Below are positions 1 to 33,808 of a stretch of DNA of 64,000 bases, piece by piece. This stretch comes from Pristiophorus japonicus (lineage: Eukaryota), in contig NC_091984.1 in NCBI RefSeq assembly GCF_044704955.1, positions 145,886,001 to 145,950,000 of the forward strand, written 5' to 3'. A model generated the notes under the pieces. It saw only the letters and a list, made by a program, of their open reading frames with translations, made no database searches and had not been told where the DNA came from. How positions within the stretch are numbered: position 1 is the first letter of the stretch; each line of letters begins with the position of its first letter. The position numbers and the translations under genes were made by a program.

Positions 1-230
1 TGATGGTGGGATCGCACTGTGCACTCTGTGCTGATTGCTGGGGGCAATCTGGAGGCAGGAGGCCACAGTCACAATATTGCATTCTCTCTCCTTAACGTGT
101 GGCTCGTGGCAGCAGCACAAAACTGTACCGAGTGAGGCCTCAGCTTAGGGAGAGGAGCAGTCAGTGTATCACCATGTACATGTTCCTGAGTGTTAGTGTG
201 GCTTACCCAGCACCGCCTGTAGGTGTGTGT
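1..230. repeat. Inverted paralog of the IgL C-exon 3' flank (17095-17326)
   Basis: Reverse complement aligns throughout, e.g. CCTTAACGTGTGGCTCGTGGCAGCAGCACAAAACTGTACCGAGTGAGGCCTCAGCTT. Confidence 0.92.
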
Positions 231-330
231 GTATGTGTATGACTGTTCCCCAGTACTGTCTGTCGGGGTGTGTGTGTGTGTTTATGTGTGTGAGTGACTG
301 TTACCCAGTACTCTCTGTTGGTGTGTGTTC

Positions 331-1230
331 AGAACATAAGAAATAGGAGCAGGACTAGACCATTGCTCCCTCGAGCCTGCTCCGCCATTCACTAAGATAA
401 TGGCTTATCTGATCATGGTCTCATCTCCACTTCCCCGCCCGTTCTCCAGAATCTTTCACTCCCTTATTGCTCAATAATCTATCTATCGCTGCCTTAAATA
501 TATCCAATGTCCCAGCCTCCACAGCTCTCTGGGACAGAGAATTCCACAGATTTACAACGCTCTGAGAGAAGAAATTCTTCCTCAACTCAATTTTAAATGG
601 GCGGCCCCGAATTCTGAGACTATGTCCCCTAGTTTTAGTTTCCCTATGAGTGGAAATATCCTCTCTGCATCCACCTTTTCGAGCCCCCTCATTATCTTAT
701 ATGTTGTGATACGATCATCTCTCATTCTTCTGAACTCCAATATGTGTTGGCCCAACCTGCTCAAACTATCTTCATAAGTCAACCTCCTCAGCTCCGAAAT
801 CGACCTCATGAACGTTTTCTGAACAGCCTCCAATTCAAATACATCCTTCATTAAATACGGAGACCAAAATTGTACGCAGTACTCTCGGTTTGGTCTCAGC
901 AATACCCTGTACAGTTGTAGCAGGTCTTCCCTGCTTTTATATTCTATCCCCCTTGCAATAAAGGCCAACATTCCATTTGCCTTCCTGATCACTTGTTGTA
1001 CCTGCATACTAAACTTTTGTGTTTCATGCACAAGGACCCTCAGTTCCAACTGTTCTACAGCACTTTGCAATCTTTCTCGATTTAACTTCTAATTTATTTT
1101 TCTATTATTTCTGCCAAAGTAGATAACCTCACATCTTCCCACATTATACTCCATCTGCCAAATTTTTGCCCACGCACTTAGCCTGTCTAAATCCCTTTGC
1201 AGATTTTGTGTCCTCATAATTTGCTTTCCG
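331..1230 (-). mobile_element. CR1 LINE 3' fragment
   Basis: [39 protein letters not shown]; CR1 3' tail. Confidence 0.9.
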
Positions 1231-9954: not shown

Positions 9955-10368
9955 TAGCCACCTAAGGACTCATTTTAAGAGTGGAAGCAAGTCTTCCTCG
10001 ATTCCGAGGGACTGCCTATGACGATGGGTGGGAAAACAAATTGCGAGGAGGAGAAAATCTGCAAAGGGATATAGACAGGAGAAGTGAGTGGGCAAAAAGT
10101 TGGCAGATGGAGTTTAATGTGGGAAAATGTCACGTTATCCACTTTGGCAGAAAAAATAGAAAAGCAAATTATTTTTTAAATGGAGAAAAATTGCAAACTG
10201 CTGCAGTACAGAGGGACCTGGGTGTCCTTGTGCATGAAACACAAAAAGTTAGTATGCAGGTACAGCAAGTGATCAGGAAGGCCAATTGAATGTTGGCCTT
10301 TATTACAAGGGGGATGGAGTATAAAAGCAGGGAAGTCCTGCTACATCTGTACAGGGTATTGGTGAGAC
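9955..10368 (+). mobile_element. RTE 3' tip followed by a CR1 fragment
   Basis: GAAGCAAGTCTTCCTCGATTCCGAGGGAC (reverse complement at ~57400-57430), then WQMEFNVGKC...KAN. Confidence 0.75.
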
Positions 10369-10616
10369 ACTCTGAGAACCCCCCCGATCACCCTGGTCCC
10401 CACCGTTCCACACAAGGTCAGCCCTCGATCACCCCCCCGGTCTCCCATCCCCCCACACTCCAGTCCCCTAACGACCCCCGACCCCCACAGGAGCTGGAGC
10501 ATCATCGCGGCGCTCTCCTCAGGCCGCCATGACAGTACTGTAACAGTCACACACACACACCTACAGGCGGTGCTGGGCAACAGTCACACACACACACACC
10601 TACAGGCAGTGCTGGG

Positions 10617-11460
10617 CTTGACCCATCCACCTCCACGGAGGTGTGTGGGGGACCTGACCCATCCACCTCCATGGCACGAACCTGGTATTGCAGTACTTCC
10701 AGGAATGGTGCAGTGGCTCTAGGCCTTTTGGCTAAGAGCATTGGCGCAGAGTGATCCTTGAATGGGCCCAAGGTGAGCTCTGGTGTTTGTGATTTGACAA
10801 AGAATTGGAACGATTGGCTACGAATTTCAAAAAAAAAAAAACACGGGAAGGAGGCCCAAAGTGGTTCTCCCTGGATCAGGAAGGTGGTTCTCCTATGCTT
10901 TTTGGAAATAGGAGGTGGGTGGGGGGGCCTGACCCATCCACCTCCATGGCACGAACCTGGTATTGCAGTACTTCCAGGAATGGTGCAGTGGCTCTAGGCC
11001 TTTTGGCTAAGAGCATTGGTGCAGAGTGATCCTTGATGTGTGCAAGGTGACCTCTGGCGTTTGTGATTTGACAAAGAATTGGAAAGATTGGCAACGAAAA
11101 AAAAACACGGGAAGAAGGCGTGGCCTTTTGGCTAAGATCATGCGTAACTGACCTGACAGGGGAGTAACCATGACCCCAAAGTGGTTCTCCCTGGATCAGG
11201 AAGGTGGTTCTCCTATGCTTTTTGGAAACAGGAGGTGGGTGGGGTGGATTGACCCATCCACCTCCACGGAGGTGTGTGGGGGGCCTGACCCATCCACCTC
11301 CATAGCACGAACCTGGTATTGCAGTACTTCTAGGAACGGTGGCTCTCGGCCTTTTGGCTAAGAGCATTGGCGCAGAGTGACCCTTGATGTGTACAAGGTG
11401 ACCTCTGGCGTTTGTGATTTGACAAAGAATTGGAAAGATTGGCTACGAATTAAAAAAAAA
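10617..11460 (+). mobile_element. Three tandem U1/U2 snRNA-derived SINE-like units (10617-10840, 10856-11104, 11120-11460)
   Basis: Each has U2 3' sequence (ACCTGGTATTGCAGTACTTC), U2 5' sequence (GGCCTTTTGGCTAAGA), a shared ~90-nt tail and an A-run. Units 2 and 3 also carry U1-like sequence. ACACGGGAAGGAGGC-like repeats separate them. Confidence 0.85.
11145..11213 (+). ncRNA. U1 snRNA 5' fragment (nt ~1-51) plus duplicated nt ~28-47, inside a SINE-like unit
   Basis: taactgacctgacaggggagtaaccatgaccccaaagtggttctccctgg vs U1 ATACTTACCTGGCAGGGGAGATACCATGATCACGAAGGTGGTTTTCCCAGG (about 39/51 by eye); then gatcaggaaggtggttctcc (18/20). Confidence 0.8.
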
Positions 11461-11467
11461 TACGGGA

Positions 11468-12808
11468 AGGAGGCGAGTGAACCGGTGCGCTCAGTGCTAT
11501 CTTGGGAGGCACTGTTCACCCTCCCGTCGCAGAGAAGACGCACTATCACAGTGCAAATGTACAACCCCCACATCCCCGTCATTGATGTGCTGACTTTCCT
11601 CAACAGGTTTTTCGATGGGGCAGGAAACAGCAGTGACTTGAAAGACGGGCACGGAATATGGACCAGCAAGCGCCAGATCCAGGTCACCATGAAGGTGGAC
11701 GCCAGCGGAACCATCCTGCACCCCCCCTCCAGCTTTTCCATCGGAGGAAGCCGGGGCTACATGGTGTACGCTGGCCAACCCAACGTGTGCCGCACCTGCG
11801 GGAAGGCAGGCCATGTGGCGGCAAGCTGCAAGACTGTCATCTGCCGAAACTGCAAGAACGAGGGCCACCAGACAAAAGACTGTAAGGAGACCAAGTGCTG
11901 CAACCTCTATGGTCTGGCTTGGCACCTTTACAAAAACTGCCCCAAACGCAATTTCAGCTATGCGCAGGCAGCAAAGAACATTGCACCAGAGGAGGAGGAA
12001 GCTGACGAACACAACGCTCCAGAGGAGAGCCACACCCTCCCCCCGACCAATGCCGCCGTGGACTCGGGACAAGACGGCGAGGAAGAGAACACTGCTACCG
12101 CGAGCTGCGAGCCACCAGCCTCGCCCCCAGAGCACCGAGTCCAGAAACGAGCAGACATCAGACGATGAAGCGGAATGGCAGACAGTAAGGAAAAAGGCCC
12201 GCGGGCGCAAGGCGAAGAGGTGACCACCAAGCTCGGCAGAAACCAGCGACGGCAGCTTGTCTGATGAGGAAAAGTGCCACCGCCTAAAGAAGAGGCAATG
12301 CGCCAACCCACGGCCACAGGAAACCGGGAGCAGTGAAGCGACAAACACAGCCCTGCCCCAGAAACCTGCGAGCAATGAAGGGCCCAGCGCACACGAGCTC
12401 CGGGACACCGAGAGCGAAGGAGTAACCAACGCAGACCAGACCTGGGATAACGGGAGCAGCGAAGTGCCCAGCACACCCCACCTCCGGAATACCGGGAGCG
12501 ACGCAGCGATCGACACACACCAGCTCGACACCGCCGCGACTGAGGAAAAGAGGGAACCACCAACACCAGGCGAGGACTATGCAGAGAACATTGAGGACTT
12601 AATCACAAAACTGCAGCAGTCCCCTGGTCAAAACATCGCCACAGCAGAGGACGACGATGACCACGCCACCCCAGGTGTAGTAAATGTTGATATTGATGTT
12701 GATAGTAATAACTTACACATGCTGGAAATCGCCATTGTGAATTATGGGGGAATTGAAATCGATTTACCTGAAATTGAAAACGATGCATCTGAACTGCAAT
12801 GTCTGTAA
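11468..12808 (+). pseudogene. Tx1/Keno ORF1 (ZCCHC3-like zinc-knuckle protein), disrupted
   Basis: MYNPHIP...GIWTSKRQ...HPPSSFSIGGSRGYMVYAGQPNVCRTCGKAGHVAASC...CRNCKNEGHQTKDC; acidic tail broken into several frames. Confidence 0.85.
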
Positions 12809-12828
12809 ATGTAAAAAATAGCTTTAAA

Positions 12829-15800
12829 ATGGATTTAAAAATTGCTAATATTAACGTGCGTAGCGTAAAATCGACTACGCGATGTGTTTCCACCTTGGGG
12901 TACCTCGCCAAGGTCAAAGCAGACCTGCTGTTTTTGCAGGAGTGCGGTCTGCCGCACTTCAGCAGTTACCGGCAGTGGTCACGATGGTGGACCCATGGAC
13001 CATCCATATGGTCAGAGGGCAACGACAGCCGGGCTTCCGGCTTGGGCATTCTGCTGCAGGGAGGCCACTTCACCATCACCGAAGTTAAGGAGGTGGTGGG
13101 CGGCCGCCTCCTTGTAGCAGACGTAATGTACAAAAACTCCCCTCTCAGGTTCATTAATGTTTACGCCCCAGTTCCCAAGGACGAGAGGCTGGCCCTCTTC
13201 CAGCAGCTCCCACTGCTACTGGCAACGTCCAGGCCAGTCATTCTGGGTGGTGACTTCAACTGCATCATCGATGCGGCTGGACGATCCAGCAGAGCCGACA
13301 GCAAACTGGACGCCACGTCCAAACTCCTGATGGATGCCGGTAAAAGATGCCAAGCTGTGCGACGTCTTCAGCAACCCTGCAGACGGAGCACCGCGCAGAT
13401 ACACCTGGTCGAGACCAGACGGGTCCGTCCGTTCCAGAATAGACTTCCTGTTTGTGTCCCACACGCTCAAGGTCAGATCCACCGACGTCACACCGGTGTT
13501 CTTCTCTGACCACTGCCTCCTACTGGCCGACTGTCACCCACAGGAAAACCAGAAATTTGGCAGAAGGATATGGAAGCTGAACGTGAAACTGTTGACTCCG
13601 GAAAACGTTGAGGAACTCAAGAGGGATTACAAAGGTTGGAGAACCGTAAAACCCCTCTGCGATTCCCCGATGCACTGGTGGGAAACAATCAAGACGCACA
13701 TCAAGAGGTTCTTCATCCTCAAAGGTGTTCAGGAGACAAGAGGGAGACAGAGGGAATTGTCCCAACTCCAGACAAATATGCAAAACCTGCTCCTGCTGCA
13801 GTCGATGGGGGTCGATGTCGCGGAGGAACTCGAAGAGGTGAAGGGCCAGCAAGCCTCGCTCTTTGCCTCGGAGTCCTCCAAGATCATCTTCCGCTCCAGA
13901 GTCCGCTCCGTTGAGCAGGATGAGACGTGCTCGCGCTTCTTCTTCCAAAAGGTACACAGGGGGAGCTCTGTGATCACCAGCCTAAGGGAAGGAGACGGTT
14001 CTGTGACGTCTTCGCAGCCTGACATGCAGAGGATCAGCAAATCCTTCTACGACGTCAAACCCACAGACCGCGTGGCCTCCCAGTCTTTCCTGTCGTCTAT
14101 TTCGGAGGTCTTAGACGACAGCGAACGGGAGAGTCTGGACCACCCGCTAACTCTGGATGAGCTGACAAAGGCCGTCCGGTCCTTCGAAACGAATAAAACT
14201 CCCGGAAGCGATGGCTTACCGGTCGAGTTGTACTCGGCTCTGTGGGACTGGATAGGCCCGGACCTGCTGGAAGTGTACGGAGGTATGCTTCTGGCCGGCA
14301 GCATGTCAGAATCGATGAGAAAGGCATCATCACCCTCATCTACAAGCAGAAGGGGGAGAGGGAGGAAATCAAAAACTGGCCGCCCATTTCGCTGCTCAAT
14401 GTGGACTACAAGATCCTGTCAAAGGTCATCGCCAACAGGGTCAAGTCTGCCCTTGAGCTGGTGATTCACCAGGACCAGACCTGCGCTGTCCCCGGCAGGA
14501 AGATCTCTGATAGCCTCGCGCTACTCAGAGATACGATCGCCTACGTGCGGGACAGGAGGGTGGACACCTGCTTAATCAGCTTAGACCAGGAGAAAGCCTT
14601 TGACAGGATATCGCACACGTACCTGATGGACGTGCTCTCCAAAATGGGGTTTGGGGAGGGTATCTGCAATTGGGTCAAACTGCTCTACACAGACATCAGT
14701 AGTGCAGTTCTAATCAATGGGTGGGAAACTCAAAGCTTTCCAATCAGATCTGGAGTCAGGCAAGGCTGTCCTCTCTCGTCTGTCTTGTTTGTGTGTTGTA
14801 TCCAGCCCTTTGCCGAGTCCATTAGGAAGGATGTGGGCATTAGAGGGGTGACGATCCCAGGCAGCGGAGGCGCCCAGGTCAAAACCTCGCTGTACATGGA
14901 CGACGTCGCCGTCTTTTGCTCGGATCCGCAGTCGGTCCACAGATTGCTCGCAATCTGCGACCAGTTTGAACTGGCCTCGGGAGCAAAGGTCAATCGCACC
15001 AAGAGCGAGGCTATGCTCTTTGGTCACTGGACCGACCGAGCCTCCATTCCCTTCACCGTCAAGCCAGATTTCCTGAAGGTGCTGGGAATATGGTTCGGAG
15101 CGAACGGGGCGTGCGCCAAAAACTGGGACAAGCGCATTGCCAAGGTCAGACAGAAACTGGCATTTTGGGAGCAGCGCTCCCTTTCCATCACAGGCAAGAA
15201 TCTGGTCATCAGGAGTGAGGTGCTCTCGGTGTTGCTGTACGTGGCACAGGTCTGGCCCATCTCTCGCTCCTGTGCCGTGGCAGTCACCCGGGCCGTCTTC
15301 CACTTTGTCTGGAGGTCCAAAATGGACCGTGTCCGCAGAGACACGATGTACAAATCTCTGGACAGTAGAGGAAAGGACGTTCCGAACGTGGCCCTCATCC
15401 TAATGGCCACCTTTGTGTGCGGCTGCATCAAGCTATGCACAGCCCCCCAGTACGCAAACACCAAGTGTCACTACGTGCTGAGGTTCTACCTGTCCCCATT
15501 GTTGAGAAGGATGGGTCTGGCCACGCTGCCGCGAAACGCCCCCACCAGTTGGACCATGCCTGTCCACCTGTCCTTCGTGGAAAAGTTTTTCAAAAGAAAC
15601 CCCTTTGACCACAAGGCCATCAAACAGTGGTCAGCACGTAAGGTCCTGGACGCCCTCCGAAAGAAGGAGATGGTGGACCCTGTCGGGTGGTTCCCTGAGC
15701 GGACTGTCGAACTTGTTTGGCAGAACGTCTCATCGCCAAAGCTCACACACAAGCACCAAGACGTAGCTTGGTTGGCGGTGAGGGGGGCCCTACCCGTCAG

Positions 15801-16224
15801 AGTATTCATGCACAGCCGACGCCTCAGCAGCACGGCACGGTGCCCCCGGGCCGGCTGTGGGGCGGACGAGACTGTCACCTATCTCCTTCAGGATTGCGCC
15901 TTTGCAACGCAGGTCTGGAAAGAGATGCAGTGGTTGCTGTCGAGGTTCATCCCAAGCAGCTCCGTAACACAGGACTCTGTGCTCTATGGGCTGTTCCCAG
16001 GGACTCACACCGAGACAGACATCACCTGCTGCTGGAGGGCTATCAACTCGGTCAAAGACGCTCTTTTGTCTTGCCGAAACTTGCTGGTTTTCCAGAACAA
16101 GGAGATGACCATGTCCGCATGTTGCAGACTGGCGCAATCCAAGATCCAGGAATACGTGCTGAGGGACGCACTGAAAATTGGTGCAGTCGCCGCAAAGGCA
16201 CGGTGGGGAAGGGCCACAGTTTAA
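12829..16224 (+). pseudogene. Tx1/Keno ORF2 (APE endonuclease, RT, C-terminal zinc-binding motif), two frameshifts
   Basis: NINVRS, LQEC, GGDFN, SRID, SDH; LDQEKAFD, GVRQGCPLS, YMDD; CPRAGCGADETVTYLLQDC. Frameshifts near 13338 and 14320. Confidence 0.92.
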
Positions 16225-16634
16225 AGCCCTTCTGCCACGGAAAACCTGGGGGCAGGAATCAGTACAAACCTCCCTCGAGCTGTATTTGTAATTTACTCTT
16301 TGTGTACATAGAGCACCAAATCTGTAAACACCAATGTCGTGCCATATACAATGCAAGCTGTGTTACGAAATGCATGTTTGAAAAGAAAAAAATGTAAATG
16401 TACCGTCACGCATTCCGGGCACTGTATTGTAACACATGAAATGTAATTTGTGTGAATGTACCACAATGTATCCCGTTTATTGTACCGAATCGCACTTGAA
16501 CAGAAAAACAAGAAATGTAACGAACGGAACTGCCGTCAGCACCCAGATGTATTGTACGGGATTGCTGACCGCAGCGAAATGTACTGAAATGCCATTGAAT
16601 GTACTGTACAGATTATTTTATTAAAAAAAAAACA

Positions 16635-16796
16635 CGGCCTTTTGGCTAAGATCAAGTGTCGTATCTGTTCTTATCAGTTATATCCCCTATGGGGACATGA
16701 TATTGAATTGATTTTTGGACAGGGAGCTAGATCAGGGGCTTGCCCTGTCCACTCCATGCACCGACCTGGTATTGCAATATTTCCAGGAACGGTGCA
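16635..16796 (+). pseudogene. RNU2: U2 snRNA-derived sequence (nt ~10 to 3' end, internal deletion)
   Basis: CGGCCTTTTGGCTAAGATCAAGTGTCGTATCTGTTCTTATCAGTT...ATTTTTGG (Sm site)...GACCTGGTATTGCA...CCAGGAACGGTGCA. Branch-recognition GTAGTA changed to GTCGTA; upstream is LINE poly(A), so no snRNA promoter. Confidence 0.93.
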
Positions 16797-17091
16797 ACTT
16801 CGCCTCTCGGCTTTTTGGCCTAAGATCAAACACATTGGCGCAAAGTGATCTTTGACGTTAGAGTTGATCTGGAACGAAATTGGATAAAAAAAATAATTTA
16901 AAAAAAAAGTCACACACCACACCGAGATGGAACAGGGGCTTGCTCTGTCCACTCCATGCACCGACCTGGTATTGCAGTGTTTCCAGGAACGGTGCAGCTT
17001 CCCCTCTCGGCCTTTTGGCTAAGATCAAATGTAGTAGCGCAAAGTGATCTTTGGCGCTGGAGTTGATCTGACAAGAATGAATTTTAAAAAA
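16635..17091 (+). mobile_element. Two U2-derived SINE-like units (16635-16908, 16924-17091)
   Basis: U2 3' end joined to U2 5' end, then a GCGCAAAGTGATCTTTG...GAGTTGATCTG tail and an A-run. The second unit is flanked by GTC(A/T)CACACCACACC at 16909-16923 and 17092-17106. Confidence 0.85.
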
Positions 17092-17629
17092 GTCTCACAC
17101 CACACCTACAGGCGGTGCTGGGTAAACCACACTAACACTCAGGGACATGTACACAGTGATACACTGACTGCTCCTCTCCCGAAGCTGAGGCCTCACTCGG
17201 TACAGTTTTGTGCTGCTGCCACGAGCCACACGTTAAGGAGAGAGAATGCAACGTTGTGACTGTGGTCTCCTGTCCCCAGATTGCCCCCAGCAGTCAGCAC
17301 AGAGTGCACAGTGTGATCCCACCATCGGGGGCTGCCCCAACACCCACAGTGTGCAGAGTGAGAACCAATGCTCACACTGGGAGGGTTTAATCCCAGCAGC
17401 TTTTAGTGTCTGTGTTTAATCTTGTGCACTCCAGGGGTTCGAGGTCAAATTGATCGTTTTAAAATGATTGATAATTGGCTTTGATTCAAATCTCCTGCTG
17501 ATGTGCCATTGATTGACAGCCCACCCAGCCAATCAGGACAGACACTTACTGAAATACAGCCAATCCAGCTGAGGGGGAGGTGGGACATTTCCAAAGCACT
17601 CGCCAGACACAGACTGAATATTCTTCACG

Positions 17630-17730: not shown

Positions 17731-17926
17731 AAAAAAGTTGTGGGGATTTTCTCCACACCGTGAGAATCCTGTCCCTTTAAACGGGGACAAAACCTTGAAT
17801 TGTAACATCAGGGTGAGCAGGGAGGGGGTCTGCTTACTGAAGCGGCACTTCACAGTTTAACATTAGTTTTACTCTGCTGACAGTCTTCAGCATCTTCGAG
17901 AGGTTTTACTTGGCAGCACGAGTCAA

Positions 17927-18056
17927 CACTGTCCCATCAAACCCTCCCAGGGCAGGTACAGGACGGGTTAGATACAGAGTAAAGCTCCCTCTACACTGTC
18001 CCATCAAACACTCCCAGGGCAGGTACAGCACGGGTTACATACAGAGTAAAGCTCCA
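17927..18056 (+). repeat. Two copies of a ~66-bp satellite unit in the IgL 3' region
   Basis: ACACTGTCCCATCAAAC.CTCCCAGGGCAGGTACAG.ACGGGTTA.ATACAGAGTAAAGCTCC twice. Confidence 0.85.
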
Positions 18057-18223
18057 ATGACACTGCCCCAATAACGTGTCTTACCCCCTGACCCTCAGAT
18101 GCTTTCCCTGACCCAGTCCCGAGAAGGGAGTAGAAATGCAGTGCTGACAATGACCTTTGCCCTTTTGGCTCACCCCCTGTTCTATTTAAAGTTGCGTCTC
18201 CCCCGCGGACTGTCCCTGACACA

Positions 18224-22800: not shown

Positions 22801-24832
22801 GGCCTACTCCTGCACCTATTTTCTATGTTTCTATGTTTCTAACAACTCTCTGCGGCAGGGAATTCCACAGGTTAACAACTCTCTGAGTGAAGAAGTTTCT
22901 CCTCATCTCAGTGCAAAATGGCTTACCTCTTATCCTCAGACTATGTCCCCTGCTTCTAGACTTCCCAACATCGGGAACATTCGTCCCGCATCTAACTTGT
23001 CCAGTCCCGTCAGAATCTTATATGTTTCTATGAGATCCCTTCTCATCCTTATAAACTCCAGTGTATAAAGACCTAGTTGATCCAGTCTCTCCTCATATGT
23101 CAGTCCAGCCATCCCGGGAATCAGTCTGGTGAACCTTCGCTGCACTCCCTCAATAGAAAGGACATCCTTCCTCAGATTAGGAGACCAAAACTGAACACAA
23201 TATTCCAGCTGGGGACTGTACAACTGCAGTAAGACCTCCCTGCTCCTATACTCAAATCCCCTAGCCATGAAGGCCAACATACCAATGGCCTTCTTCACCG
23301 CCTGCTGTACCTGCATGCCAACTTTCAATGACTGATGAACCATGACAGCCAGGTCTCGTTGCAACTCCCCTTTTCCCTCATCTGTCACCATTGAGATAAT
23401 ATTCTGCCTTTGTGTTTTTGCCTCCAAATTGGATAACCTCACATTTATCCACATTATACTGCATCTGCCATACATTTGCCCACTCACCGAACCTATCCAA
23501 ATCACCCTGCTGCCTCTTAGCGTCCTCCTCACAGCTCACACCGCTACCCAGTTTAGTATCATCTACAAACTTGGAGATATTACACTCAATTCCTTCATCC
23601 AAATCATTAATGTATATTGTAAAGAGCTGGTGTCCCAGCACTGAGCCTTGCGGCACTCCACTACTCACTGTCTGCCATTCTGAAAAGGACCCATTTATCC
23701 CGACTCTCTGCTTCCTGTATGCCAACCAGTTCTCTATCCACGTCAGTACATTACCGCCAATACCATGTGCTTTGATTTTGCACAACAATCTCTTGTGTGG
23801 GACCTTGTCAAAAGCCTTTTGAAAGTCCAAATACACCACATCCACTGGTTCTCCCTTGTCCTCTCTAATAGCTACATCCTAAAAATATTCCAGAAGATTT
23901 GTCAAGCATGATTTCCCCTTCATAAATCCATGCTGACTTGGATCGATCCTGTCACTGCTTTCCAAATGCACTGTTATTTCATCCTTAATAAATGATTCCA
24001 ACATTTTCCCCACTACTGATGTCAGTCTAACTGGTCTATAAATACCCCATTTCATCTCTCCCTCCCTTTTTAAAAAGTGGTGTTACATTAACTACGTACA
24101 TTGCAGGCCAGTCAGCCTAACCCCGGTGGTGGGAAAATTGTTAGAAAAAGTCCTGAGAGACAGGATAAATCTTCATTTAGATAGATGGGTTAATCAAGGA
24201 CAGTCAGCATGGATTTGTTGAGGGAAGATCATGTCTGGCTAACTTAATTGAATTAATGGAGGAAGAAATAAGGAGGGTCGATGAGGTTAGCACGTTTGAT
24301 GTACTGTATATGGATTTTAGCAAGACATTTGATAAGGTCTCACATGGCAGACTGGTCACGAAAGTAAAAGTCCATGGGATCCAGGGCAAAGTGGTAAGTT
24401 GGATCCAAAGTTGTCTCAGAGGCAGGAAGCAAAGGGTAATAGTTGATGGGTGTTTTTTGTGACTGGAAGGCTGTTTCCAGTGGGGTTCTGCAGGGCTCAG
24501 TACTAGGTCCCTTGCTTTTTGTGGTATATATCAATGATTTAGACTTGAATGTAGGGGGTATGATTAAGAAGTTTGCAGACGATTCTAAAATCGGCTGTGT
24601 TGTTGATAATGAAGAAGAAAGCTGGAGACAGCTAGAAGATAACAATGAAATTGTCAGGTGGGCAGAACAGTGGCAAATGGGATTTAATCCAGAGAAGTCT
24701 GAGGTAATGCTTTTGGGGAAGGATAACAAGGCAAGGCAATACATATTAAATGGTAGGACACTGAGGATTTTTGAGGAACAAAGGGACCTGGGTATGCATG
24801 TCCACAGATCCCTGAAGGTAGCAGGCCAGGTA
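19890..24832 (+). mobile_element. Long CR1 LINE (SGNH-esterase ORF1, APE/RT ORF2), degenerate, with nested insertion
   Basis: CRKC, VGDSIVRG, DGLHLN; ITETW, VYYRPP, DFNYP, SDHN; KSPGPD; resumes at ~24105 with DFSKTFDKV, GSVLGP, FADD. Confidence 0.9.
22495..24096 (-). mobile_element. CR1 LINE nested in the plus-strand CR1
   Basis: LDFQKAFDKVPH, QGSVLG, FVDD, (ATAGAAAC)n tail. Confidence 0.88.
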
Positions 24833-27270: not shown

Positions 27271-29925
27271 GCACAGCAAATGTAACGCCCCTATTTAAAA
27301 AATGAGGCAGACAGAAAGCAGAAATCTTTAGACCAGTTAGCCTAACATCTGTGGTTGGGAAAATGCTGGAGTCCATTATTAAGGAAGCAGTAGCAGGACA
27401 TTTGGAAAAGCATAGTTCAATCAAGCAGAGTCAGCATGGTTTTATGAAAGGGAAATCACGTTTGACAAAATTGCTGGAATTCTTTAAAGATGTAACGAGC
27501 AGGGTGGATAAAGGGGAACCAGTGGATGTGGTGTATTTGGATTTCCAGAATGCATTCAATAAGGTGCCACATAAAAGGCACAAGATAAAAGTTCCTGGGG
27601 TTGGGGGTAATATATTAGCATGGATAGAGGATTGGCTTACGAACAAAAAAGAGAGAGTCAGGATAAATGGTTCACTTTCCCGTTGGCAAATCCCTAATGG
27701 GATGCCGCAGGGATCGGTGCTGGGGCCTCAATTATTTACAAACTACATTAATGATTTTGATGAAGGGACCAAGTGTAATGTAGCCAAATTTGCTGATGAT
27801 ACAAAGAAGGACATTGAGCTATCCAACAAAGACGATTACACATTACACCAAACAAATGAAAAAGTAAGGGAGGAAATTGAGGAAATGATGGCCCCTCCAA
27901 AATGGGATTTGGGATTCAATATTCAGATTCTCTCCTGGGTTCTAATCGTGTGTCAATCACTAGCCATTGTATAGTTGGTTCTTGTGGTGTAACTATTTAT
28001 CTTATCCTTTAAGTTAAAACAGAATACAAAGGAAGGGAATGTTGAAGGGTTGTTTAGATGAACCAAAGCCAAAGTGTTTGTATATAAAACTGAAGTCAGA
28101 TCAAGCCCGAACATTTTTGTTGTAAAATTGTTGGTTTGTCAGGAAAAAGTACTGTTTTTGATGTAAAACAGGAATGTAATCTGGAGTTTTTGACTGAGAC
28201 TGCAATACGCCCAAATAGAGCTCATGGAAAAAGAACTCCACAAGTAATGACTCTAGTTTTATATTTGCAAAACATTAAAGGAGGGAGTGTAAGGTTACTA
28301 ATCTTCAGAAAAGCACAGAAAGAGACCATGAACTAAAGATTAATACAAGCTTTTGGAATTAAGCTGGACAATTAAGGGCATTCTTGGTCAGGGAACAAAA
28401 CTGACTCCATGCATAACAAGAATGGAGTTGTTACATGAGGCCCTGAACTTGATAGACCAGGGTGGGGAAAACTAGCTCACTGGAGACACCAAGTCTGTAA
28501 AAAGACCAGACAACAAAGGAACCACACTAGGTGCACATCTTTTGGGATGAAGTTTTAAGATGAGAAATCAACTTGAGCCTTGCAGATTCAGTGTGCAAAT
28601 GGGAAAACAGACGAGTCCATTATTGCAGTCAATCAACCAAGGGGACCACAAAACAATGTATCGATGCAAACACTATCAGAAACCGCAGTGGCGGGAGATC
28701 AGTCATAACCTGGATATAAATATGCGAGCTAGAAGCAGCTCTGCAGAATACGGAAGGAGGACAGGAACAGACGGAAGAAGTAGTACACAGAAGAAATAGA
28801 AGGACACGTGTACAGATGGACACAGGTCGAAAGAACAAACAGATGAACAAACGGAAGGACATGTAGTACGGAACATACATGGAGGGAACAACACTGCAGA
28901 GAATGGCCAAAAGAAGAACCAACCGGTCACAGAACCAACGACCACAAACCTACTAAAGATAAAGCCAGGAAGGGCGATTGTATGTCTTCAGTTGATTTTT
29001 AAGAATCAGAGTAGATTGAAAAATAATCACCCTATAAGACAAAGATGGGTGGGAAAGCAAATTGTGAGGAGGACACAAATAGTCTGCAAAGGGATATAGA
29101 CAGACCAAGTGAATGGGTACAAATTTGGCAGATGGAGTATAATGTGGGAAAATGTGAGGTTTTCCACTTTTGCAGAACAAAGAGGAAAGCAAATAAATTT
29201 TCAAATGGAGAAAAATTGCAAAGGAGACCTTGTGCATAAAACACAAAAAGTTAGTATGTGGTTACAACAATAATCAGGAAGGCAAATTAAATGTTGGCCT
29301 TAATTGCAAGGGGGATAAGTATAAAAGCAGAGAAATCCTGCTACATCTATACAGGGTATTGGTGAGGCCACACCTGGAGTACTGTGTACAGTTTTCATCT
29401 CCATACTTAAGAAAGGATATACTTGCATTGGCAGCAGTTCAGAGAATGTTCACTAGATTGATTCTGGAGATGAGGGGGTTGACTTACGAGGATAGGTTGA
29501 GTAGGTTAGGCTTATAATATTGGAGTTCAGAAGAACGAGAGGTGATTTTATTGAAACATATCAGATAATGAGGGGGCGACAAGGTGGATGCAGCGAGGAT
29601 ATTTACACTCAGAGGAGAAAATAGTACTTGGGGTCATAGTCTCAGAATAAGTGGCCGTCCATTTAAAACTGAGTTGAGGAGGAACTTCTTCTCTGAGGCT
29701 TGTAAATCTGTGGAAATCTCTGCCCCAGAGAGCTGTGTAGGCTGAGTCATTGATTATATTTAAGGTGGAGATAGACAGATTTTTGAGCGATAAGAGAATA
29801 AAGGGTTATGGGGAGCGGGCAGGGAAGTGGAGCTGTGTCCAAGATCAGATCAGCCATGATCTTATTAAATGGCGGAGCAGGCTGAGGGGCCAGGTGGCCG
29901 ACTCCTGCTCCTATTTCTTATGTTA
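27271..29925 (+). mobile_element. CR1 LINE split by ERV remnant
   Basis: SQHGFMKG...KFADDTK, resumed at 29039 through to the 3' tail. Confidence 0.85.
27808..29038 (+). mobile_element. ERV remnant (env membrane anchor, PPT, partial LTR) interrupting a CR1
   Basis: MAPPKWDLGFNIQILSWVLIVCQSLAIV resembles the env tail at ~54900; AAAGGAAGGGAA then TG at 28040; CR1 ORF2 resumes at 29039. Confidence 0.6.
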
Positions 29926-30135: not shown

Positions 30136-33100
30136 GGTTCTGTCTTCATGAGGGAAGATACAAATAGCCTTCCGAAGGTACTAGGAGACAGTGGGTCTAG
30201 TGAGAAGGAGGAACTGAAGGATATCCTTATTAGGTGGGAAATTGTGTTAGGGAAATTGATGGGATTGAAGGCTGATAAATCCCCGGGGCCTGATAGTCTG
30301 TATCCCAGAGTACTCAAGGAAGTGGCCCTAGAAAGAGTGGATGCATTGATGATCATTTTCCAACAGTCTATCGACTCTGGATCAGTTCCTATGGACTGGA
30401 GGGTAGCTAATGTAACACCACTTTTTTAAAAAAAGGAGAGAGAGAGAAAACATGTAATTATAGACCAGTTAGCCTGACATCAGTAGTGGGGAAAATGTTG
30501 GAATCAATCATTAAGGATGAAATAGCAGCGCATTTGGAAAGCAGTGACAGGATCAGACCAAGTCAGCATGGATTTATGAAAGGGAAATGATGCTTGACGC
30601 ATCTTCTGGAATTTTTTTGAGGATGTAACTAGCAGAGTGGACAAGGGAGAACCAGTGGATGTGGTGTATTTGGACTTTCAAAAGTCTTTTGACAAGGTCC
30701 CACACAAGGGATTGGTGTGCAAAATCAAAGCAAATGTTATTGGGGGTAATATATTGACGTGGATAGGAAACTGGTTGGCAGACAGGAAGCAGGGAGTCAG
30801 GATAAACAGGTCCTTTTCGGAATGGCAAGCAGTGACTAGTGGAGTGCCGCAGGGTTCTGTGCTGGGACCCCAGCTCTTTACAATGTACATTAACAATTTA
30901 GATGAAGGAATAGAGTGTAATATCTCCAAATTTGCAGATGAGACTAAACTGGGTGGCGGTGTGAGCTGTGAGGAGGACGCTAAAAGGCAGCAGGGTGACT
31001 TGGACAAGTTCGGTGAGTGGGCAAATACATGGCAGATGCAGTATAATGTGGATAAATGTGAGGTTATCCATTTTGGGGTCAAAAACACGAAGGCAGAATA
31101 TTATCTGAATGGCAGCAAACTCGGAAAAGGTGAGGTGCAACGAGACCTGGGTGTCATGGTTCATCAGTCACTGAAAGTCGGCATGCAGGTACAGCAGGCG
31201 GTAAAGAAGGCAAATGGTATGTTAGCCTTCATAGCTTGGGGATTTGAATATAGAAGCAGAGAGGTCTTAATGCAGCTGTACAGGGCCTTAGTGAGGTCTC
31301 ACGTGGAATATTGTGTTCAGTTTTAGTCTCCTAGTCTGAGGAAGGATGTTCTTGCAATTGAGGGAGTGCAGGGAAGGTTCACCAGACTGATTCCAGGGGT
31401 GGCTGGGCTGTCATATGAGGAGAGACTGGATCAACTGGGCCTTTATTCACTAGAGTTTAGAAGGATGAGAGGGGATCTCACAAAAACATAAAATTCTGAC
31501 GGGACTGGACAGGATAGATGCAGGAATCATGTTACCGAAGTTGGGGAAGTCCCAGGGGACACAGTCTTAGGATAAGTGGTATGCCATTTAGGACTGAGAT
31601 GAGGAGAAACTTCTTCACTCGGAGAGTTGTTAACCTGTGGAATTCCCTGCCGCAGAGATTTGTTGATGCCAGTTCATTCGATATATTCAAGAGAGAGTTA
31701 GATATGGCCCTTACGGCTAAAGGAATCAAGCGGTATGGAGAGAAAGCAGGAAAGGGGTACGGAGGGAATGATCAGCCATGATCTTATTGAATGGCGGAGC
31801 AGGCTCGAGGGGCCGAATGGCCTCCTCCTGCTCCTAATATTCTTATGGAACATTAGTCCGTGTTCTGGGGATTATCTGCTGGGTCCAGGTTTAATCAGCA
31901 AGGGATTTGTGCGAGTCCCAGTTAATAAAAAGAAAAGCCAAATTCAAGAAAGACCTGCAATTATATAGCACCTTTCACACCTGAGGAGGTCCTAAAGTGC
32001 TTCACAGCCAATGAAGTACATTTTTAAGTGTAGTCACTGTTGTAATGTGAGAAACATGGCAACCAATTTGTGCACAACAAGCTCCCACACACAGCAATGA
32101 GTTGAATGACCTCTTCATGGAAGAGGATACAAATAACGTCCAAGAAATGCTCGGGAACCTAAGGTCGAGTGAGCAAGAGGAATTAAAGGAAATGATTATT
32201 AGTAACAAAATAGAGCTGGAGAAACTAACGGGACTGAAGGCCGATAAATCCCCAGGGCCTGATGATCTGCATCCCAGAGGTAGCCATGGAAATAGTAGAT
32301 GCATTGGTTGTCATCTTTCAAAATTCTATAGATTATGGAACAGTTCCTGCAGATTGTAGGGTGGCAAATGTAATCCCACTATTTAAAAAAAGGAGGGAGA
32401 GAGAAAACGGGGAACTACAGACCGGTTATCCTGACATCAGTAGTAGGGAAGATGCCAGAGCCTATTACAAAGGATGTGATAACGGCACACTGAGATAAAA
32501 TCAACGGGATTAAACAAAGTCAACATGGATTTATGAAAGGAAACTCACGTTTGACAAATGTACTGGAGTTTTTGGAGGATGCAATTGACAGAATAGATAA
32601 GGGATAACCAGTGGATGTAGTGTATATGGATTTTCAGAAGGCCTTTGATAAAAATCTCACATAAGAGGTTAGTGTGCAAAATTAAAGCACATAGGATTGT
32701 GGGTAATGTATTGGCATGGATTGAAAATTGGTTCACTGAAAGGAAACAGTCGGAATAAATGGGTTTGTTTCAGGGTGGCGGGCAGTGACAAGTGGGGTAC
32801 CACAGGGATCAGTGCTTGGGCCCCAGATATATATATATACACATATAAATAAATGATTTGAATGAGGGAACCAAATGTTATATTTTCAAGTCTGCTGACG
32901 ACACAAAATTAGGTGGGATTGTGAGTTGTGTGGAGATGCAAAGACACTGCAAGGCGATTTCGATCGGTTGAGTGAGTGAGCAAACACATGGCAGATGTAA
33001 CATATTGTGGATAAATGTGAAGTTACTCACTTTGGTAGGAAAAACATAAGGACAAAGTATTATTTAAATGGTGATAGCTTGGGAAGTGTCGATGGACAGA

Positions 33101-33808
33101 GGGACCTAGGCGTCCTTGTACACCAGTCAGTGAAAGCAAACATACAGGTGCAGCAAGCAGTTAAGAAGGCAAATAGTATGTTGGCCTTCATTGCAAGAGG
33201 ATTTGAGTACAGGAGCAAGGATGTCTTACGACAGGGCCTTGGTGAGACCGCACCTGGAGTATTGTGTGCAGTTTTGGTCTACTTACCTAAGAAAGGATAT
33301 ACTTGCCATAGACGGAGTGCAGCGAAGGTTCACCAGACTGATTCCTGGGATGGGTAGGACTGTCGTATGACGAGAGATTGGGTCGATTAGGTCTGTATAC
33401 ACTAGAGTTTAGAAGAGTGAGAGATGATCTCATTGAAACGTATAAAATTCTGACTGGTTTGGGCAGACTGGATGTGGGGAGGATGGTTTCCCGGGCTGGG
33501 AAGTCTAGAACAAGGAGTCACAGTCTCAGGATACGAGGTAGGAAATTTACAAATGAGATGAGGAGAAATGTTTTCACTCAGAGGGTGGTGAACCTGTGGA
33601 ATTCTCTGCCACAGAAGGCTGTGGAGGCCAAGTCACTGAATATATTTAAGAGGCAAACAGATGGATTTCTCGAAACAAAAGGCATCAAGGGGTATGGGGA
33701 AAAAGCGGGAATATGGTGTTGAGATAGAGGATCAGCCATGATCATATTGAATAGCGATGCAGACTCGAAGGGGCGAATGGCCTACTACTGCTCCTATTTT
33801 CTATGTTT
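30136..33808 (+). mobile_element. Two tandem CR1 3' halves (~30136-31845, ~32110-33808)
   Basis: Each has KSPGPD, RT motifs and a CR1 tail. Confidence 0.88.

What the first reader, a model, noticed from the sequence alone, without database searches (positions are those of the whole stretch)
10617..17091. Candidate new SINE family built from spliceosomal snRNAs (U2 plus U1), clustered around a U2-targeting Keno-like LINE
Seen: five short units flank the Tx1 LINE. The longest (11120-11460) reads U2 nt ~11-29, U1 nt ~1-51, U1 nt ~28-47 again, the U2 Sm site and stem-loops III and IV, the U2 5' end again, a ~90-nt unique tail, then poly(A). All five share related tails and an A-run, but they start at different 5' positions and are bounded by ~15-nt direct repeats, as expected for separate target-primed retrotransposition events. 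The tail does not match the LINE 3'UTR, so poly(A) is the only shared 3' feature. Established: Keno (Tx1 clade) inserts into U2 genes, and snRNA-headed SINEs (SINEU) are known from crocodilians. Inference: this is a shark SINEU-like family, chimeric for two snRNAs and mobilised by Tx1/Keno. I do not know of a description of it.
Basis: partly seen in the sequence, partly recalled or inferred. Interest (0 to 1): 0.92.

Follow-up and report, generated by a model that had tools for sequence, protein, structure and literature searches.

The report
Shark snRNA-mosaic retroposons nested around LINE
Five poly(A)-tailed copies of a short mobile element made of pieces of the spliceosomal U2 and U1 RNAs are stacked around a dead Tx1-type LINE in an elasmobranch genome; it is a fish counterpart of the SINEU elements published only for crocodilians, not a new kind of element.

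Summary
Five units lie at 10618-11460 and 16633-17091 around a 5.2-kb Tx1-clade LINE. They form two subfamilies. B (u4, u5) is a whole U2, then U2 nt ~1-38, a hairpin tail and an A-run. A (u1-u3) is U2 nt 11-35, U1 nt ~3-51, U1 nt ~28-47, U2 Sm site/SLIII/SLIV, U2 nt ~4-26, a longer tail and an A-run.

New here:
- A 94%-identical inverted paralogue at window 1-280 lacks the whole block, so the block is an insertion.
- The LINE is 5'-truncated inside ORF1 and has two ORF2 frameshifts.
- The 14-mers between units are copies of the LINE's first 14 nt, so they are target-site duplications.
- All four nested insertions sit at older A-runs. None hit the U2 motifs or the canonical Keno site at U2 nt 38/39 inside u4.
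- The tail starts exactly after U2 nt 38. This suggests the core began as a transcript of a Keno- or Utopia-disrupted U2 gene.

Best reading: a SINEU-like non-autonomous retroposon family. Mobilisation by this LINE family is plausible but not shown, and "U2-targeting Keno" is not supported at this locus.

This scan has already noted the same family at ten or more other loci of this genome.

The parts
10583..10616 (+). Left copy of the outer direct repeat (GTCACAC...CTACAGGCAGTGCTGGG). It bounds the whole block.
   Evidence: The paralogous empty site at window 1-280(-) has one copy fewer of this ~31-37-nt unit.
10618..10841 (+). u1: subfamily A unit, 5'-truncated inside the duplicated stem-loop III. 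A-run at 10829-10841.
   Evidence: (90.7-93.7% identical to u3/u2).
10842..10855 (+). T1: 14-nt CACGGGAAGGAGGC, the left target-site duplication of u2.
   Evidence: It is a copy of the first 14 nt of the LINE copy.
10856..11105 (+). u2: subfamily A unit, 5'-truncated within the U1 piece. It lacks the 36-nt SLIII duplication. A-run at 11097-11105.
11106..11119 (+). T2: 14-nt CACGGGAAGAAGGC. It is the right target-site duplication of u2 and the left one of u3.
11120..11460 (+). u3: longest subfamily A unit. Order: U2 nt ~11-35 (11120-11146), U1 nt ~3-51 (11147-11194), U1 nt ~28-47 again (11194-11214), U2 Sm site (11218-11228), SLIII twice (11231-11303), SLIV (11307-11338), U2 nt ~4-26 (11339-11363), tail with nested hairpin (11364-11451), A-run (11452-11460).
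   Evidence: U2 29.9 bits, U1 22.5 bits; fold z = -4.4, modules fold separately.
11461..16632 (+). Tx1-clade LINE copy, dead. It is 5'-truncated inside ORF1. ORF1 remnant 11461-12168 carries the second ZCCHC3-type RBD and CCHC knuckles. ORF2 lies in three frames (12799-13509, 13334-14464, 14242-16224) and carries APE endonuclease, RT and zf-RVT. 3'UTR 16225-16622, A-run 16623-16632. Its first 14 nt (11461-11474) are T3.
16633..16908 (+). u4: subfamily B unit. It begins CAC plus U2 from nt ~10-11 through the mature 3' end (to ~16800), then U2 nt ~1-30, tail B with hairpin, and A-runs at 16886-16908. CACGG at 16633-16637 repeats TACGG at 11461-11465, giving the LINE target-site duplication together with the A-run.
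   Evidence: (U2 107.7 bits).
16909..16923 (+). Left target-site duplication of u5 (GTCACACACCACACC), followed by 3 extra nt (GAG).
   Evidence: (D4).
16927..17091 (+). u5: subfamily B unit, 5'-truncated in U2 SLIII. Order: U2 SLIII/SLIV, U2 nt ~1-38 (ends ...ATGTAGTA at 17036), tail B (17037-17085), A-run (17086-17091).
   Evidence: U2 homology stops at model position 38; 87.8% to u4.
17092..17122 (+). Right target-site duplication of u5 (17092-17106), lying within the right copy of the outer direct repeat (17092-17122).
1..280 (-). Paralogous empty site. The inverted duplicate of both flanks is contiguous here, with no block between them.
   Evidence: (flank R 94.4% over 231 nt; flank L end 83.6% over 73 nt).

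Best explanation
The units are copies of a non-autonomous, poly(A)-tailed retroposon family of the SINEU type, in two subfamilies. They were inserted by target-primed reverse transcription using the machinery of a poly(A)-ended LINE, most likely the Tx1-clade family represented by the dead copy between them.

Origin (inferred):
1. The core is U2 nt 1-38 joined to a ~50-nt hairpin tail. This is the 5' end expected for a transcript that starts at the promoter of a U2 gene disrupted at the canonical Keno/Utopia site.
2. A reverse transcriptase that reached that RNA's 5' end jumped onto the 3' end of a mature U2 snRNA. This gave subfamily B, the 'U2 dimer'.
3. Later replacement of U2 nt ~36-92 by two U1 pieces, rewriting and duplication of SLIII, and a longer tail gave subfamily A.

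History of this locus (largely shown):
1. A first event placed [u1]-A(n)-CAC-[u4] into a CA-rich ~37-nt repeat, with a 31-37-nt target-site duplication.
2. A 5'-truncated LINE then entered u1's A-run, with target-site duplication A(n)+CACGG.
3. u3 and u2 entered the same A-run, each duplicating 14 nt that include the LINE's first bases.
4. u5 entered u4's A-run, with a 15-nt duplication.

The cluster is therefore A-tail nesting, as with tandem Alu elements, and not U2-site targeting.
For: Shown:
- U2 and U1 content.
- Shared breakpoints within subfamilies at 88-94% identity, with different 5' ends and indels.
- A-runs and direct repeats at every nested junction.
- An empty paralogous site.
- The LINE is 5'-truncated in ORF1. 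The frame is open to its 5' edge. Relatives P0122 and P0123 align upstream of the ATG, and P0123 carries an extra first RBD. T1 and T2 are therefore duplicated LINE sequence, that is, target-site duplications.
- Five internal U2 5' motifs are uninterrupted (four located by pattern; those of u4 and u5 read). The complete U2 of u4, which contains the Keno site, is also uninterrupted.
- U2 homology in u5 stops at model position 38.
- The Keno/Utopia 3' flank is TCTGTTCTTATCAG, after the first 37-38 nt of U2 (PMC4640811; PMC6136364).
- In u4 and u5 the U2 3' end abuts U2 nt ~1-2.
- The LINE has Tx1-type domains, elasmobranch best hits and a hit named 'transposon TX1'.

Precedent: crocodilian SINEU shows the same U1/U2 mosaics, recurrent 5' additions, tandem insertions sandwiching a target-site duplication, and Tx1 partners (PMC4494074).
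Against: - No copy count or dispersed copy was seen with my own tools. Dispersal rests on unchecked notes of this scan.
- The tail has no significant similarity to this LINE's 5' or 3' UTR. The LINE lacks its own 5' end, so the 'tail = Keno 5' end' idea is untested.
- u2 and u3 share exactly the same right-hand boundary of their target-site duplication. That needs either chance (~1 in 10) or a sequence preference of the endonuclease.
- The first event did not start at an A-run.
- No RNA evidence: no run on record as RNA holds the stretch.
Confidence: 0.7

Rival explanations
1. Self-targeting. The LINE family is a U2-site-specific Tx1 (Keno-like, possibly with a new site near U2 nt 8-12, C(T/A)CGG). 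Because the units carry U2 5' motifs, LINEs and units land in one another and build arrays.
For: - Four A-tails are followed by (C/T)ACGG, which resembles U2 nt 8-12.
- The LINE and u2 abut unit starts at U2 nt ~10-11.
- Tx1 elements are typically site-specific (PMC4494074). A second Tx1 family in this window stacks at one motif.
- u2 and u3 share identical target-site duplication boundaries.
Against: - Three of the four CACGG are simply copies of one target-site duplication. Its remaining 9 nt are LINE ORF1 sequence.
- Five internal U2 5' motifs and the intact canonical Keno site in u4 are not hit.
- u5 and the first event have no CACGG at their junctions.
- The LINE is not at nt 38/39.
Confidence: 0.15
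2. One-shot concatemer. The whole row u1-u2-u3-LINE-u4 was made in a single reverse-transcription event by serial end-to-end template jumps between co-packaged RNAs. The shared 14-mer would then be a common 5' leader.
For: - Only one pair of outer repeats bounds u1...u4.
- End-to-end jumps evidently occurred in the family's past, at the U2 3' end to U2 nt 1 junction.
- Another reader noted a 'trimer joined only by poly(A)' nearby.
Against: - The 14-mer is in-frame ORF1 sequence of a LINE truncated inside ORF1, so it is not an RNA 5' end.
- u2 would need an internal deletion exactly after the leader.
- A(n)+CACGG flanks the LINE on both sides as a normal target-site duplication.
Confidence: 0.1
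3. Not a family. The units are independent chimeric retropseudogenes made by template switching, or local tandem duplicates produced by unequal crossing-over.
For: - snRNA chimeras from LINE template switching are known in mammals (cited in PMC4494074).
- No other copy lies within the 64-kb window.
Against: - Identical multi-part breakpoints are shared by u1-u3 and by u4-u5.
- Units differ by 5' truncation point, a 36-nt indel and a 5-nt deletion, and each has its own flanking repeats.
- The paralogous duplicate lacks the block.
- Scan notes report copies in Gypsy, CR1 and satellite contexts on other pieces (unchecked).
Confidence: 0.04
4. Variant snRNA genes. The units encode functional U2/U1-like Sm-class RNAs.
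For: The Sm site and stem-loops are kept and fold well (z = -4.4). SLIII differs in sequence from U2 but is still paired.
Against: - The units have A-tails, target-site duplications and 5' truncations.
- The sequence immediately upstream of each unit is another element's A-tail, a target-site duplication copy or the flank repeat, which leaves no room for an snRNA promoter. No promoter scan was run.
- The branch-point and 5' splice-site recognition sequences are altered or lost.
- Covariation is weak: 1 pair with compensatory change out of 37.
Confidence: 0.01

Closest known systems
SINEU (SINEU-1, -2, -3) of crocodilians, Kojima 2015, PMC4494074
   Same: - Short non-coding poly(A) retroposons whose bodies are mosaics of U1 and U2 snRNA pieces.
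- Partial duplications inside the U1 piece.
- Recurrent addition of snRNA sequence at the 5' end.
- A core with a short 5' U2 piece plus a 3' part of unknown origin (SINEU-1J).
- Tandem insertions sandwiching a target-site duplication.
- Association with Tx1-clade LINEs, some of which carry U1/U2 heads.
- No pol III promoter, and internal T-runs.
   Different: - The host is an elasmobranch, not a crocodilian, so the origin is presumably independent.
- Subfamily B has a permuted 'U2 dimer' (mature U2 3' end joined to U2 nt ~1).
- The U2 piece ends exactly at the Keno/Utopia site. This was not noted in the parts of the SINEU paper I read (Results, Discussion and term searches).
- Nested insertions here go to A-runs, not to a Mariner target.
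- Sequence similarity to the crocodilian consensus sequences could not be tested (no Repbase or Dfam).
Keno (U2-specific Tx1-clade LINE; Kojima & Fujiwara 2004, as cited in PMC4640811 and PMC6136364) and Utopia (RLE-type, same site)
   Same: - The LINE here has Tx1-type ORF1 (RBD plus CCHC) and ORF2 (APE, RT, zf-RVT), and a poly(A) end.
- It lies next to U2-derived sequence.
- The units' U2 piece breaks at the Keno/Utopia landing site.
   Different: - This LINE copy is not followed by TCTGTTCTTATCAG. It abuts U2 at nt ~10-12.
- It sits in a retro-unit's A-run, not in a U2 gene.
- Phylogenetic placement with Keno was not tested.
Alu/L1 A-tail nesting and L1-mediated U6/snRNA chimeric retrocopies
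   Same: - New poly(A) elements insert into A-tails of older ones and form head-to-tail rows.
- Template jumps from an RNA's 5' end to the 3' end of an snRNA.
   Different: - The units here form a heritable family with fixed breakpoints, not one-off chimeras.
- The driver belongs to the Tx1 clade, not to mammalian L1.

Membership tests
SINEU (snRNA-headed SINE-like retroposons) | 5' region derived from U1 or U2 snRNA | tested here: met
   cmscan U2 at 107.7, 44.2, 41.0 and 29.9 bits and U1 at 22.5 bits (E 0.015) over the units.
SINEU (snRNA-headed SINE-like retroposons) | Short (<500 bp), non-coding, with a 3' poly(A) | tested here: met
   Units are 165-341 nt and end in A6-A13.
SINEU (snRNA-headed SINE-like retroposons) | A retrotransposition unit: many copies with one shared structure, not independent chimeras | tested here: inconclusive
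   Within the window there are 3 + 2 copies with shared breakpoints, separate target-site duplications and an empty paralogous site. Scan notes of 10 or more other loci are unchecked.
SINEU (snRNA-headed SINE-like retroposons) | Mobilised by Tx1-clade LINEs (shared target preference or shared head) | tested here: inconclusive
   The units are interleaved with a Tx1-clade LINE, and LINE and units share the same type of target (A-runs) and similar duplication lengths (14-15 nt plus As). There is no shared 3' sequence. The LINE's own 5' end is missing.
SINEU (snRNA-headed SINE-like retroposons) | Sequence homology to the published SINEU consensus sequences | not testable with these tools
   Repbase and Dfam are not available.
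Keno (U2-specific Tx1 LINE), for the LINE at 11461-16632 | Tx1-clade proteins: ORF1 with CCHC knuckles; ORF2 with APE endonuclease, RT and a C-terminal zinc-binding domain | tested here: met
   Pfam RBD_ZCCHC3_2nd, zf-CCHC, Exo_endo_phos, RVT_1 and zf-RVT. A hit is named 'transposon TX1 149 kDa protein' at E 1e-100.
Keno (U2-specific Tx1 LINE), for the LINE at 11461-16632 | Inserted in U2 after nt 37/38, with 3' flank TCTGTTCTTATCAG | tested here: not met
   The 3' flank is CACGG followed by U2 from nt ~13, so the LINE lies ~28 nt upstream of the intact canonical site in u4.
Keno (U2-specific Tx1 LINE), for the LINE at 11461-16632 | RT phylogeny clusters with Keno | not tested
   No labelled Keno reference sequences were at hand.
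Classical pol III SINE | Internal pol III promoter (tRNA, 7SL or 5S head) and no internal T-run terminator | tested here: not met
   The heads are U2/U1, which by established knowledge are pol II genes with external promoters. T4-T5 runs lie inside every unit (CTTTTTGG, CCTTTTGG).

The most novel reading that the evidence does not exclude
The core of the family (U2 nt 1-38 plus tail) is the 5' end of a transcript driven by the external promoter of a U2 gene that had been hit at the Keno/Utopia site. SINEU-type elements would then be born from the LINE's own landing site. They would have first been transcribed by the snRNA promoter of the target gene, and later grown by end-to-end template jumps onto mature snRNAs. 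This would answer the question Kojima (2015) left open about how promoter-less SINEU elements arise and are first transcribed. It would also predict SINEU-like families wherever Keno or Utopia and a poly(A)-dependent Tx1 coexist.
Probability: 0.3. Interest if true: 0.7.

Novelty: new member of a known kind. Interest (0 to 1): 0.5.

Why it matters
SINEU is so far a crocodilian curiosity. A second, independently built family in cartilaginous fish, again beside Tx1-clade LINEs, would show that snRNA-mosaic retroposons are a recurrent product of Tx1 reverse transcriptases meeting abundant snRNAs.

This locus is informative in three ways. It contains an ordered series of insertions with an empty paralogous site. 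It holds two subfamilies that form an evolutionary series. It has a breakpoint at the Keno/Utopia landing site, which gives a testable idea for how a promoter-less retroposon was first transcribed.

For annotation, such units should not be called U1 or U2 genes or pseudogenes in elasmobranch assemblies.

Tried and rejected
- Two exact-pattern scans of JGI metagenome contigs, one with a tail motif and one with the U1 piece. Both gave 0 hits.
- Tail compared with the LINE 5' and 3' UTRs by local alignment with shuffles. Nothing was significant (p 0.15-0.76). One weak 16/20 match between the start of tail B and LINE nt 26-46 is not above chance.
- Rfam match for the tail: none, even at E up to 10.
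- 'Shared 5' leader' reading of the 14-mer. Rejected once the LINE proved to be truncated inside ORF1.
- 'Variant snRNA gene' reading. Rejected on A-tails, target-site duplications and truncations.
- The Prion_pknot, mir-4864, SNORD51 and lncRNA sub-threshold Rfam hits were taken as chance.
- Share-of-words in small runs of the same organism (0.23-0.26 in runs of 109-165 M letters) hints at high copy number. Nothing was laid, so it cannot be assigned to the units.
Full report
**What is there**

Reading 10400-17400, with repeat finding, self-BLASTN, a five-way alignment and motif coordinates, gives this row on the + strand:

- outer repeat, left copy: 10583-10616
- u1: 10618-10841
- 14-mer T1: 10842-10855
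- u2: 10856-11105
- T2: 11106-11119
- u3: 11120-11460
- LINE: 11461-16632, whose first 14 nt are T3
- CACGG: 16633-16637
- u4: 16633-16908
- 15-mer: 16909-16923, then GAG
- u5: 16927-17091
- 15-mer: 17092-17106, lying within the outer repeat, right copy (17092-17122)

Every unit and the LINE end in an A-run of 6-13 A. BLASTN finds no other copy in the 64-kb window.

**snRNA content**

Rfam finds a near-complete U2 at 16629-16802 (107.7 bits). At relaxed threshold it finds U2 over the other units (44.2, 41.0 and 29.9 bits) and U1 at 11145-11264 (22.5 bits, E 0.015 for all 4227 families). U1 model positions 1-48 align at high posterior, with stem-loop I paired. The second U1 piece (nt ~28-47) is read directly from the sequence.

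The alignment separates two subfamilies.

- Subfamily B (u4, u5; 87.8% identical): a whole U2 up to its mature 3' end, directly followed by U2 from nt ~1-2. In u5 this second piece runs to nt 38 (...ATGTAGTA). In u4 the last bases are altered. Then come a ~50-nt tail with a GCGCAAAG...CTTTGGCGC hairpin and the A-run.
- Subfamily A (u1-u3; 91-94% identical): U2 nt ~11-35, U1 nt ~3-51, U1 nt ~28-47 again, the U2 Sm site, a rewritten SLIII (duplicated in u1 and u3), SLIV, U2 nt ~4-26, a longer tail with a nested hairpin, and the A-run.

The two tails are related. u3 folds into the separate snRNA modules (z = -4.4). Covariation support is slight, with one compensatory pair of 37.

**The block is an insertion**

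The flanks have an inverted paralogue at window 1-280. Flank R matches at 94.4% over 231 nt, and the last ~70 nt of flank L also match. In the paralogue the two flanks are contiguous, and the ~37-nt CA-rich repeat is present one time fewer.

So the 6.5-kb block is absent from the duplicate. It is bounded by a 31-37-nt target-site duplication, or by one extra repeat unit.

**The LINE**

Pfam gives these domains:

- ORF1 remnant: second ZCCHC3-type RNA-binding domain and CCHC knuckles
- ORF2: Exo_endo_phos, RVT_1 and zf-RVT

ORF2 lies in three overlapping frames, so it has two frameshifts.

Best protein hits are from sharks and rays, at 71-86% identity: Pristiophorus, Cetorhinus, Hemiscyllium, Heterodontus and Mobula. 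One hit is named 'transposon TX1 149 kDa protein'. This supports Tx1-clade membership and an elasmobranch host.

The ORF1 frame is open right to the LINE's 5' edge. Relatives align upstream of the ATG at a conserved (P/A)LFTLP motif. P0123 carries about 60 more residues with the first RBD, PF23057. The copy is therefore 5'-truncated inside ORF1 and was dead on arrival.

**Junction logic**

Because the LINE is truncated in coding sequence, its first bases (TAC GGG AAG GAG GC) cannot be an RNA leader. T1 and T2 are copies of them. They are target-site duplications made when u3 and u2 were inserted at the boundary between an older A-run and the LINE. This is the 'tandem insertions sandwiching a TSD' pattern that Kojima described for SINEU-3.

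- The LINE is flanked by A9-TACGG on the left and A10-CACGG on the right.
- u5 is flanked by (A6)GTC(A/T)CACACCACACC.
- All four nested events (LINE, u2, u3, u5) therefore start at a pre-existing A-run.
- Five internal U2 5' motifs are uninterrupted (four by pattern; those of u4 and u5 read).
- The canonical Keno site inside u4's complete U2 is also uninterrupted.
- u1 and u4 have no repeats of their own. They share the outer repeat, so the first event probably delivered u1-A(n)-CAC-u4 together, either by one template jump or from a read-through RNA.

**Keno**

Two papers place the Keno (and Utopia) site after the first 37-38 nt of U2, with 3' flank TCTGTTCTTATCAG (PMC4640811; PMC6136364). The LINE here abuts U2 at nt ~10-12, inside a retro-unit and not a U2 gene. 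A defining Keno feature is therefore not met at this copy. One copy cannot show target specificity in either direction.

**A clue to origin**

The U2 5' piece of u5 stops exactly at model position 38, which is the Keno/Utopia landing site. A random breakpoint would fall there (±1 nt) about 1-2% of the time. In u4 and u5 the mature U2 3' end is joined to U2 nt ~1-2. That is the signature of a reverse transcriptase running off the true 5' end of one RNA onto the 3' end of another.

Together these suggest a founder RNA that began at a U2 transcription start and read from U2 nt 38 into an inserted element. Snippets of snRNA were then added at the 5' end, as proposed for SINEU-1 and SINEU-2.

This is inference. 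The tail shows no significant similarity to this LINE's UTRs, and this copy has lost its own 5' end.

**Comparison and novelty**

The design, the Tx1 association, the internal U1 duplication and the tandem insertions all match SINEU (PMC4494074). Full-text searches found no SINEU-type element reported outside crocodilians. Repbase and Dfam could not be checked.

Notes of this scan report the same mosaic at ten or more other loci of this genome: in Gypsy, CR1 and satellite contexts, a 'U2 dimer + hairpin tail' copy, and a 5.6-kb LINE with a U2 head. These are unchecked leads, not evidence. They fit my finding that the LINE here lacks ~440 nt at its 5' end.

**Limits**

I worked beside those places and sent none of their letters to search tools afterwards.
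- Two metagenome scans were blank.
- As a result, copy number, dispersal, expression, and the partner LINE's 5' end and target preference all remain untested by me.

**Verdict**

This is a real, well-resolved nest of SINEU-like retroposons, a new member of a known kind. The origin hypothesis is testable.

Noticed in passing
window 40550-42121: Two 5'-truncated copies of a different Tx1-like LINE 3' end are stacked head-to-tail. Each is followed by the same motif (CTCTAAAAGAGTTTCATGCACCAATGG). The A-run of this family is internal, about 100 nt before the element's end.
   Followed up: partly
window 41294-41389: A 5S rRNA fragment (Rfam 62.5 bits, model 14-109) lies between the two stacked copies. 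It is flanked by direct repeats of (C)TAAAAGAGTTTCATG and has no A-tail. It looks like a tailless 5S retrocopy placed at that LINE family's target motif.
   Followed up: partly
window 1-280 (-) versus 10548-10616 and 17097-17326: An inverted segmental duplicate of the insertion site at 94% identity, cut by the window start. It served as the empty site.
   Followed up: yes
window 10031-10368: A ~340-nt dispersed repeat with copies at 893-1229(-), 29044-29366, 31013-31295, 23216-23487(-), 32947-33233 and 40434-40538(-), at 71-87% identity. The family was not identified.
   Followed up: no
window 17923-18070: An 81-nt match at 89% identity offset by 67 nt, indicating a short tandem repeat just downstream of the block (seen in self-BLASTN).
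   Followed up: no
window 10537-10616: The insertion site is itself a short tandem array of a ~37-39-nt CA-rich unit (ACAGTCACAC...CTACAGGCGGTGCTGGGCA). This makes the length of the outer target-site duplication ambiguous.
   Followed up: partly
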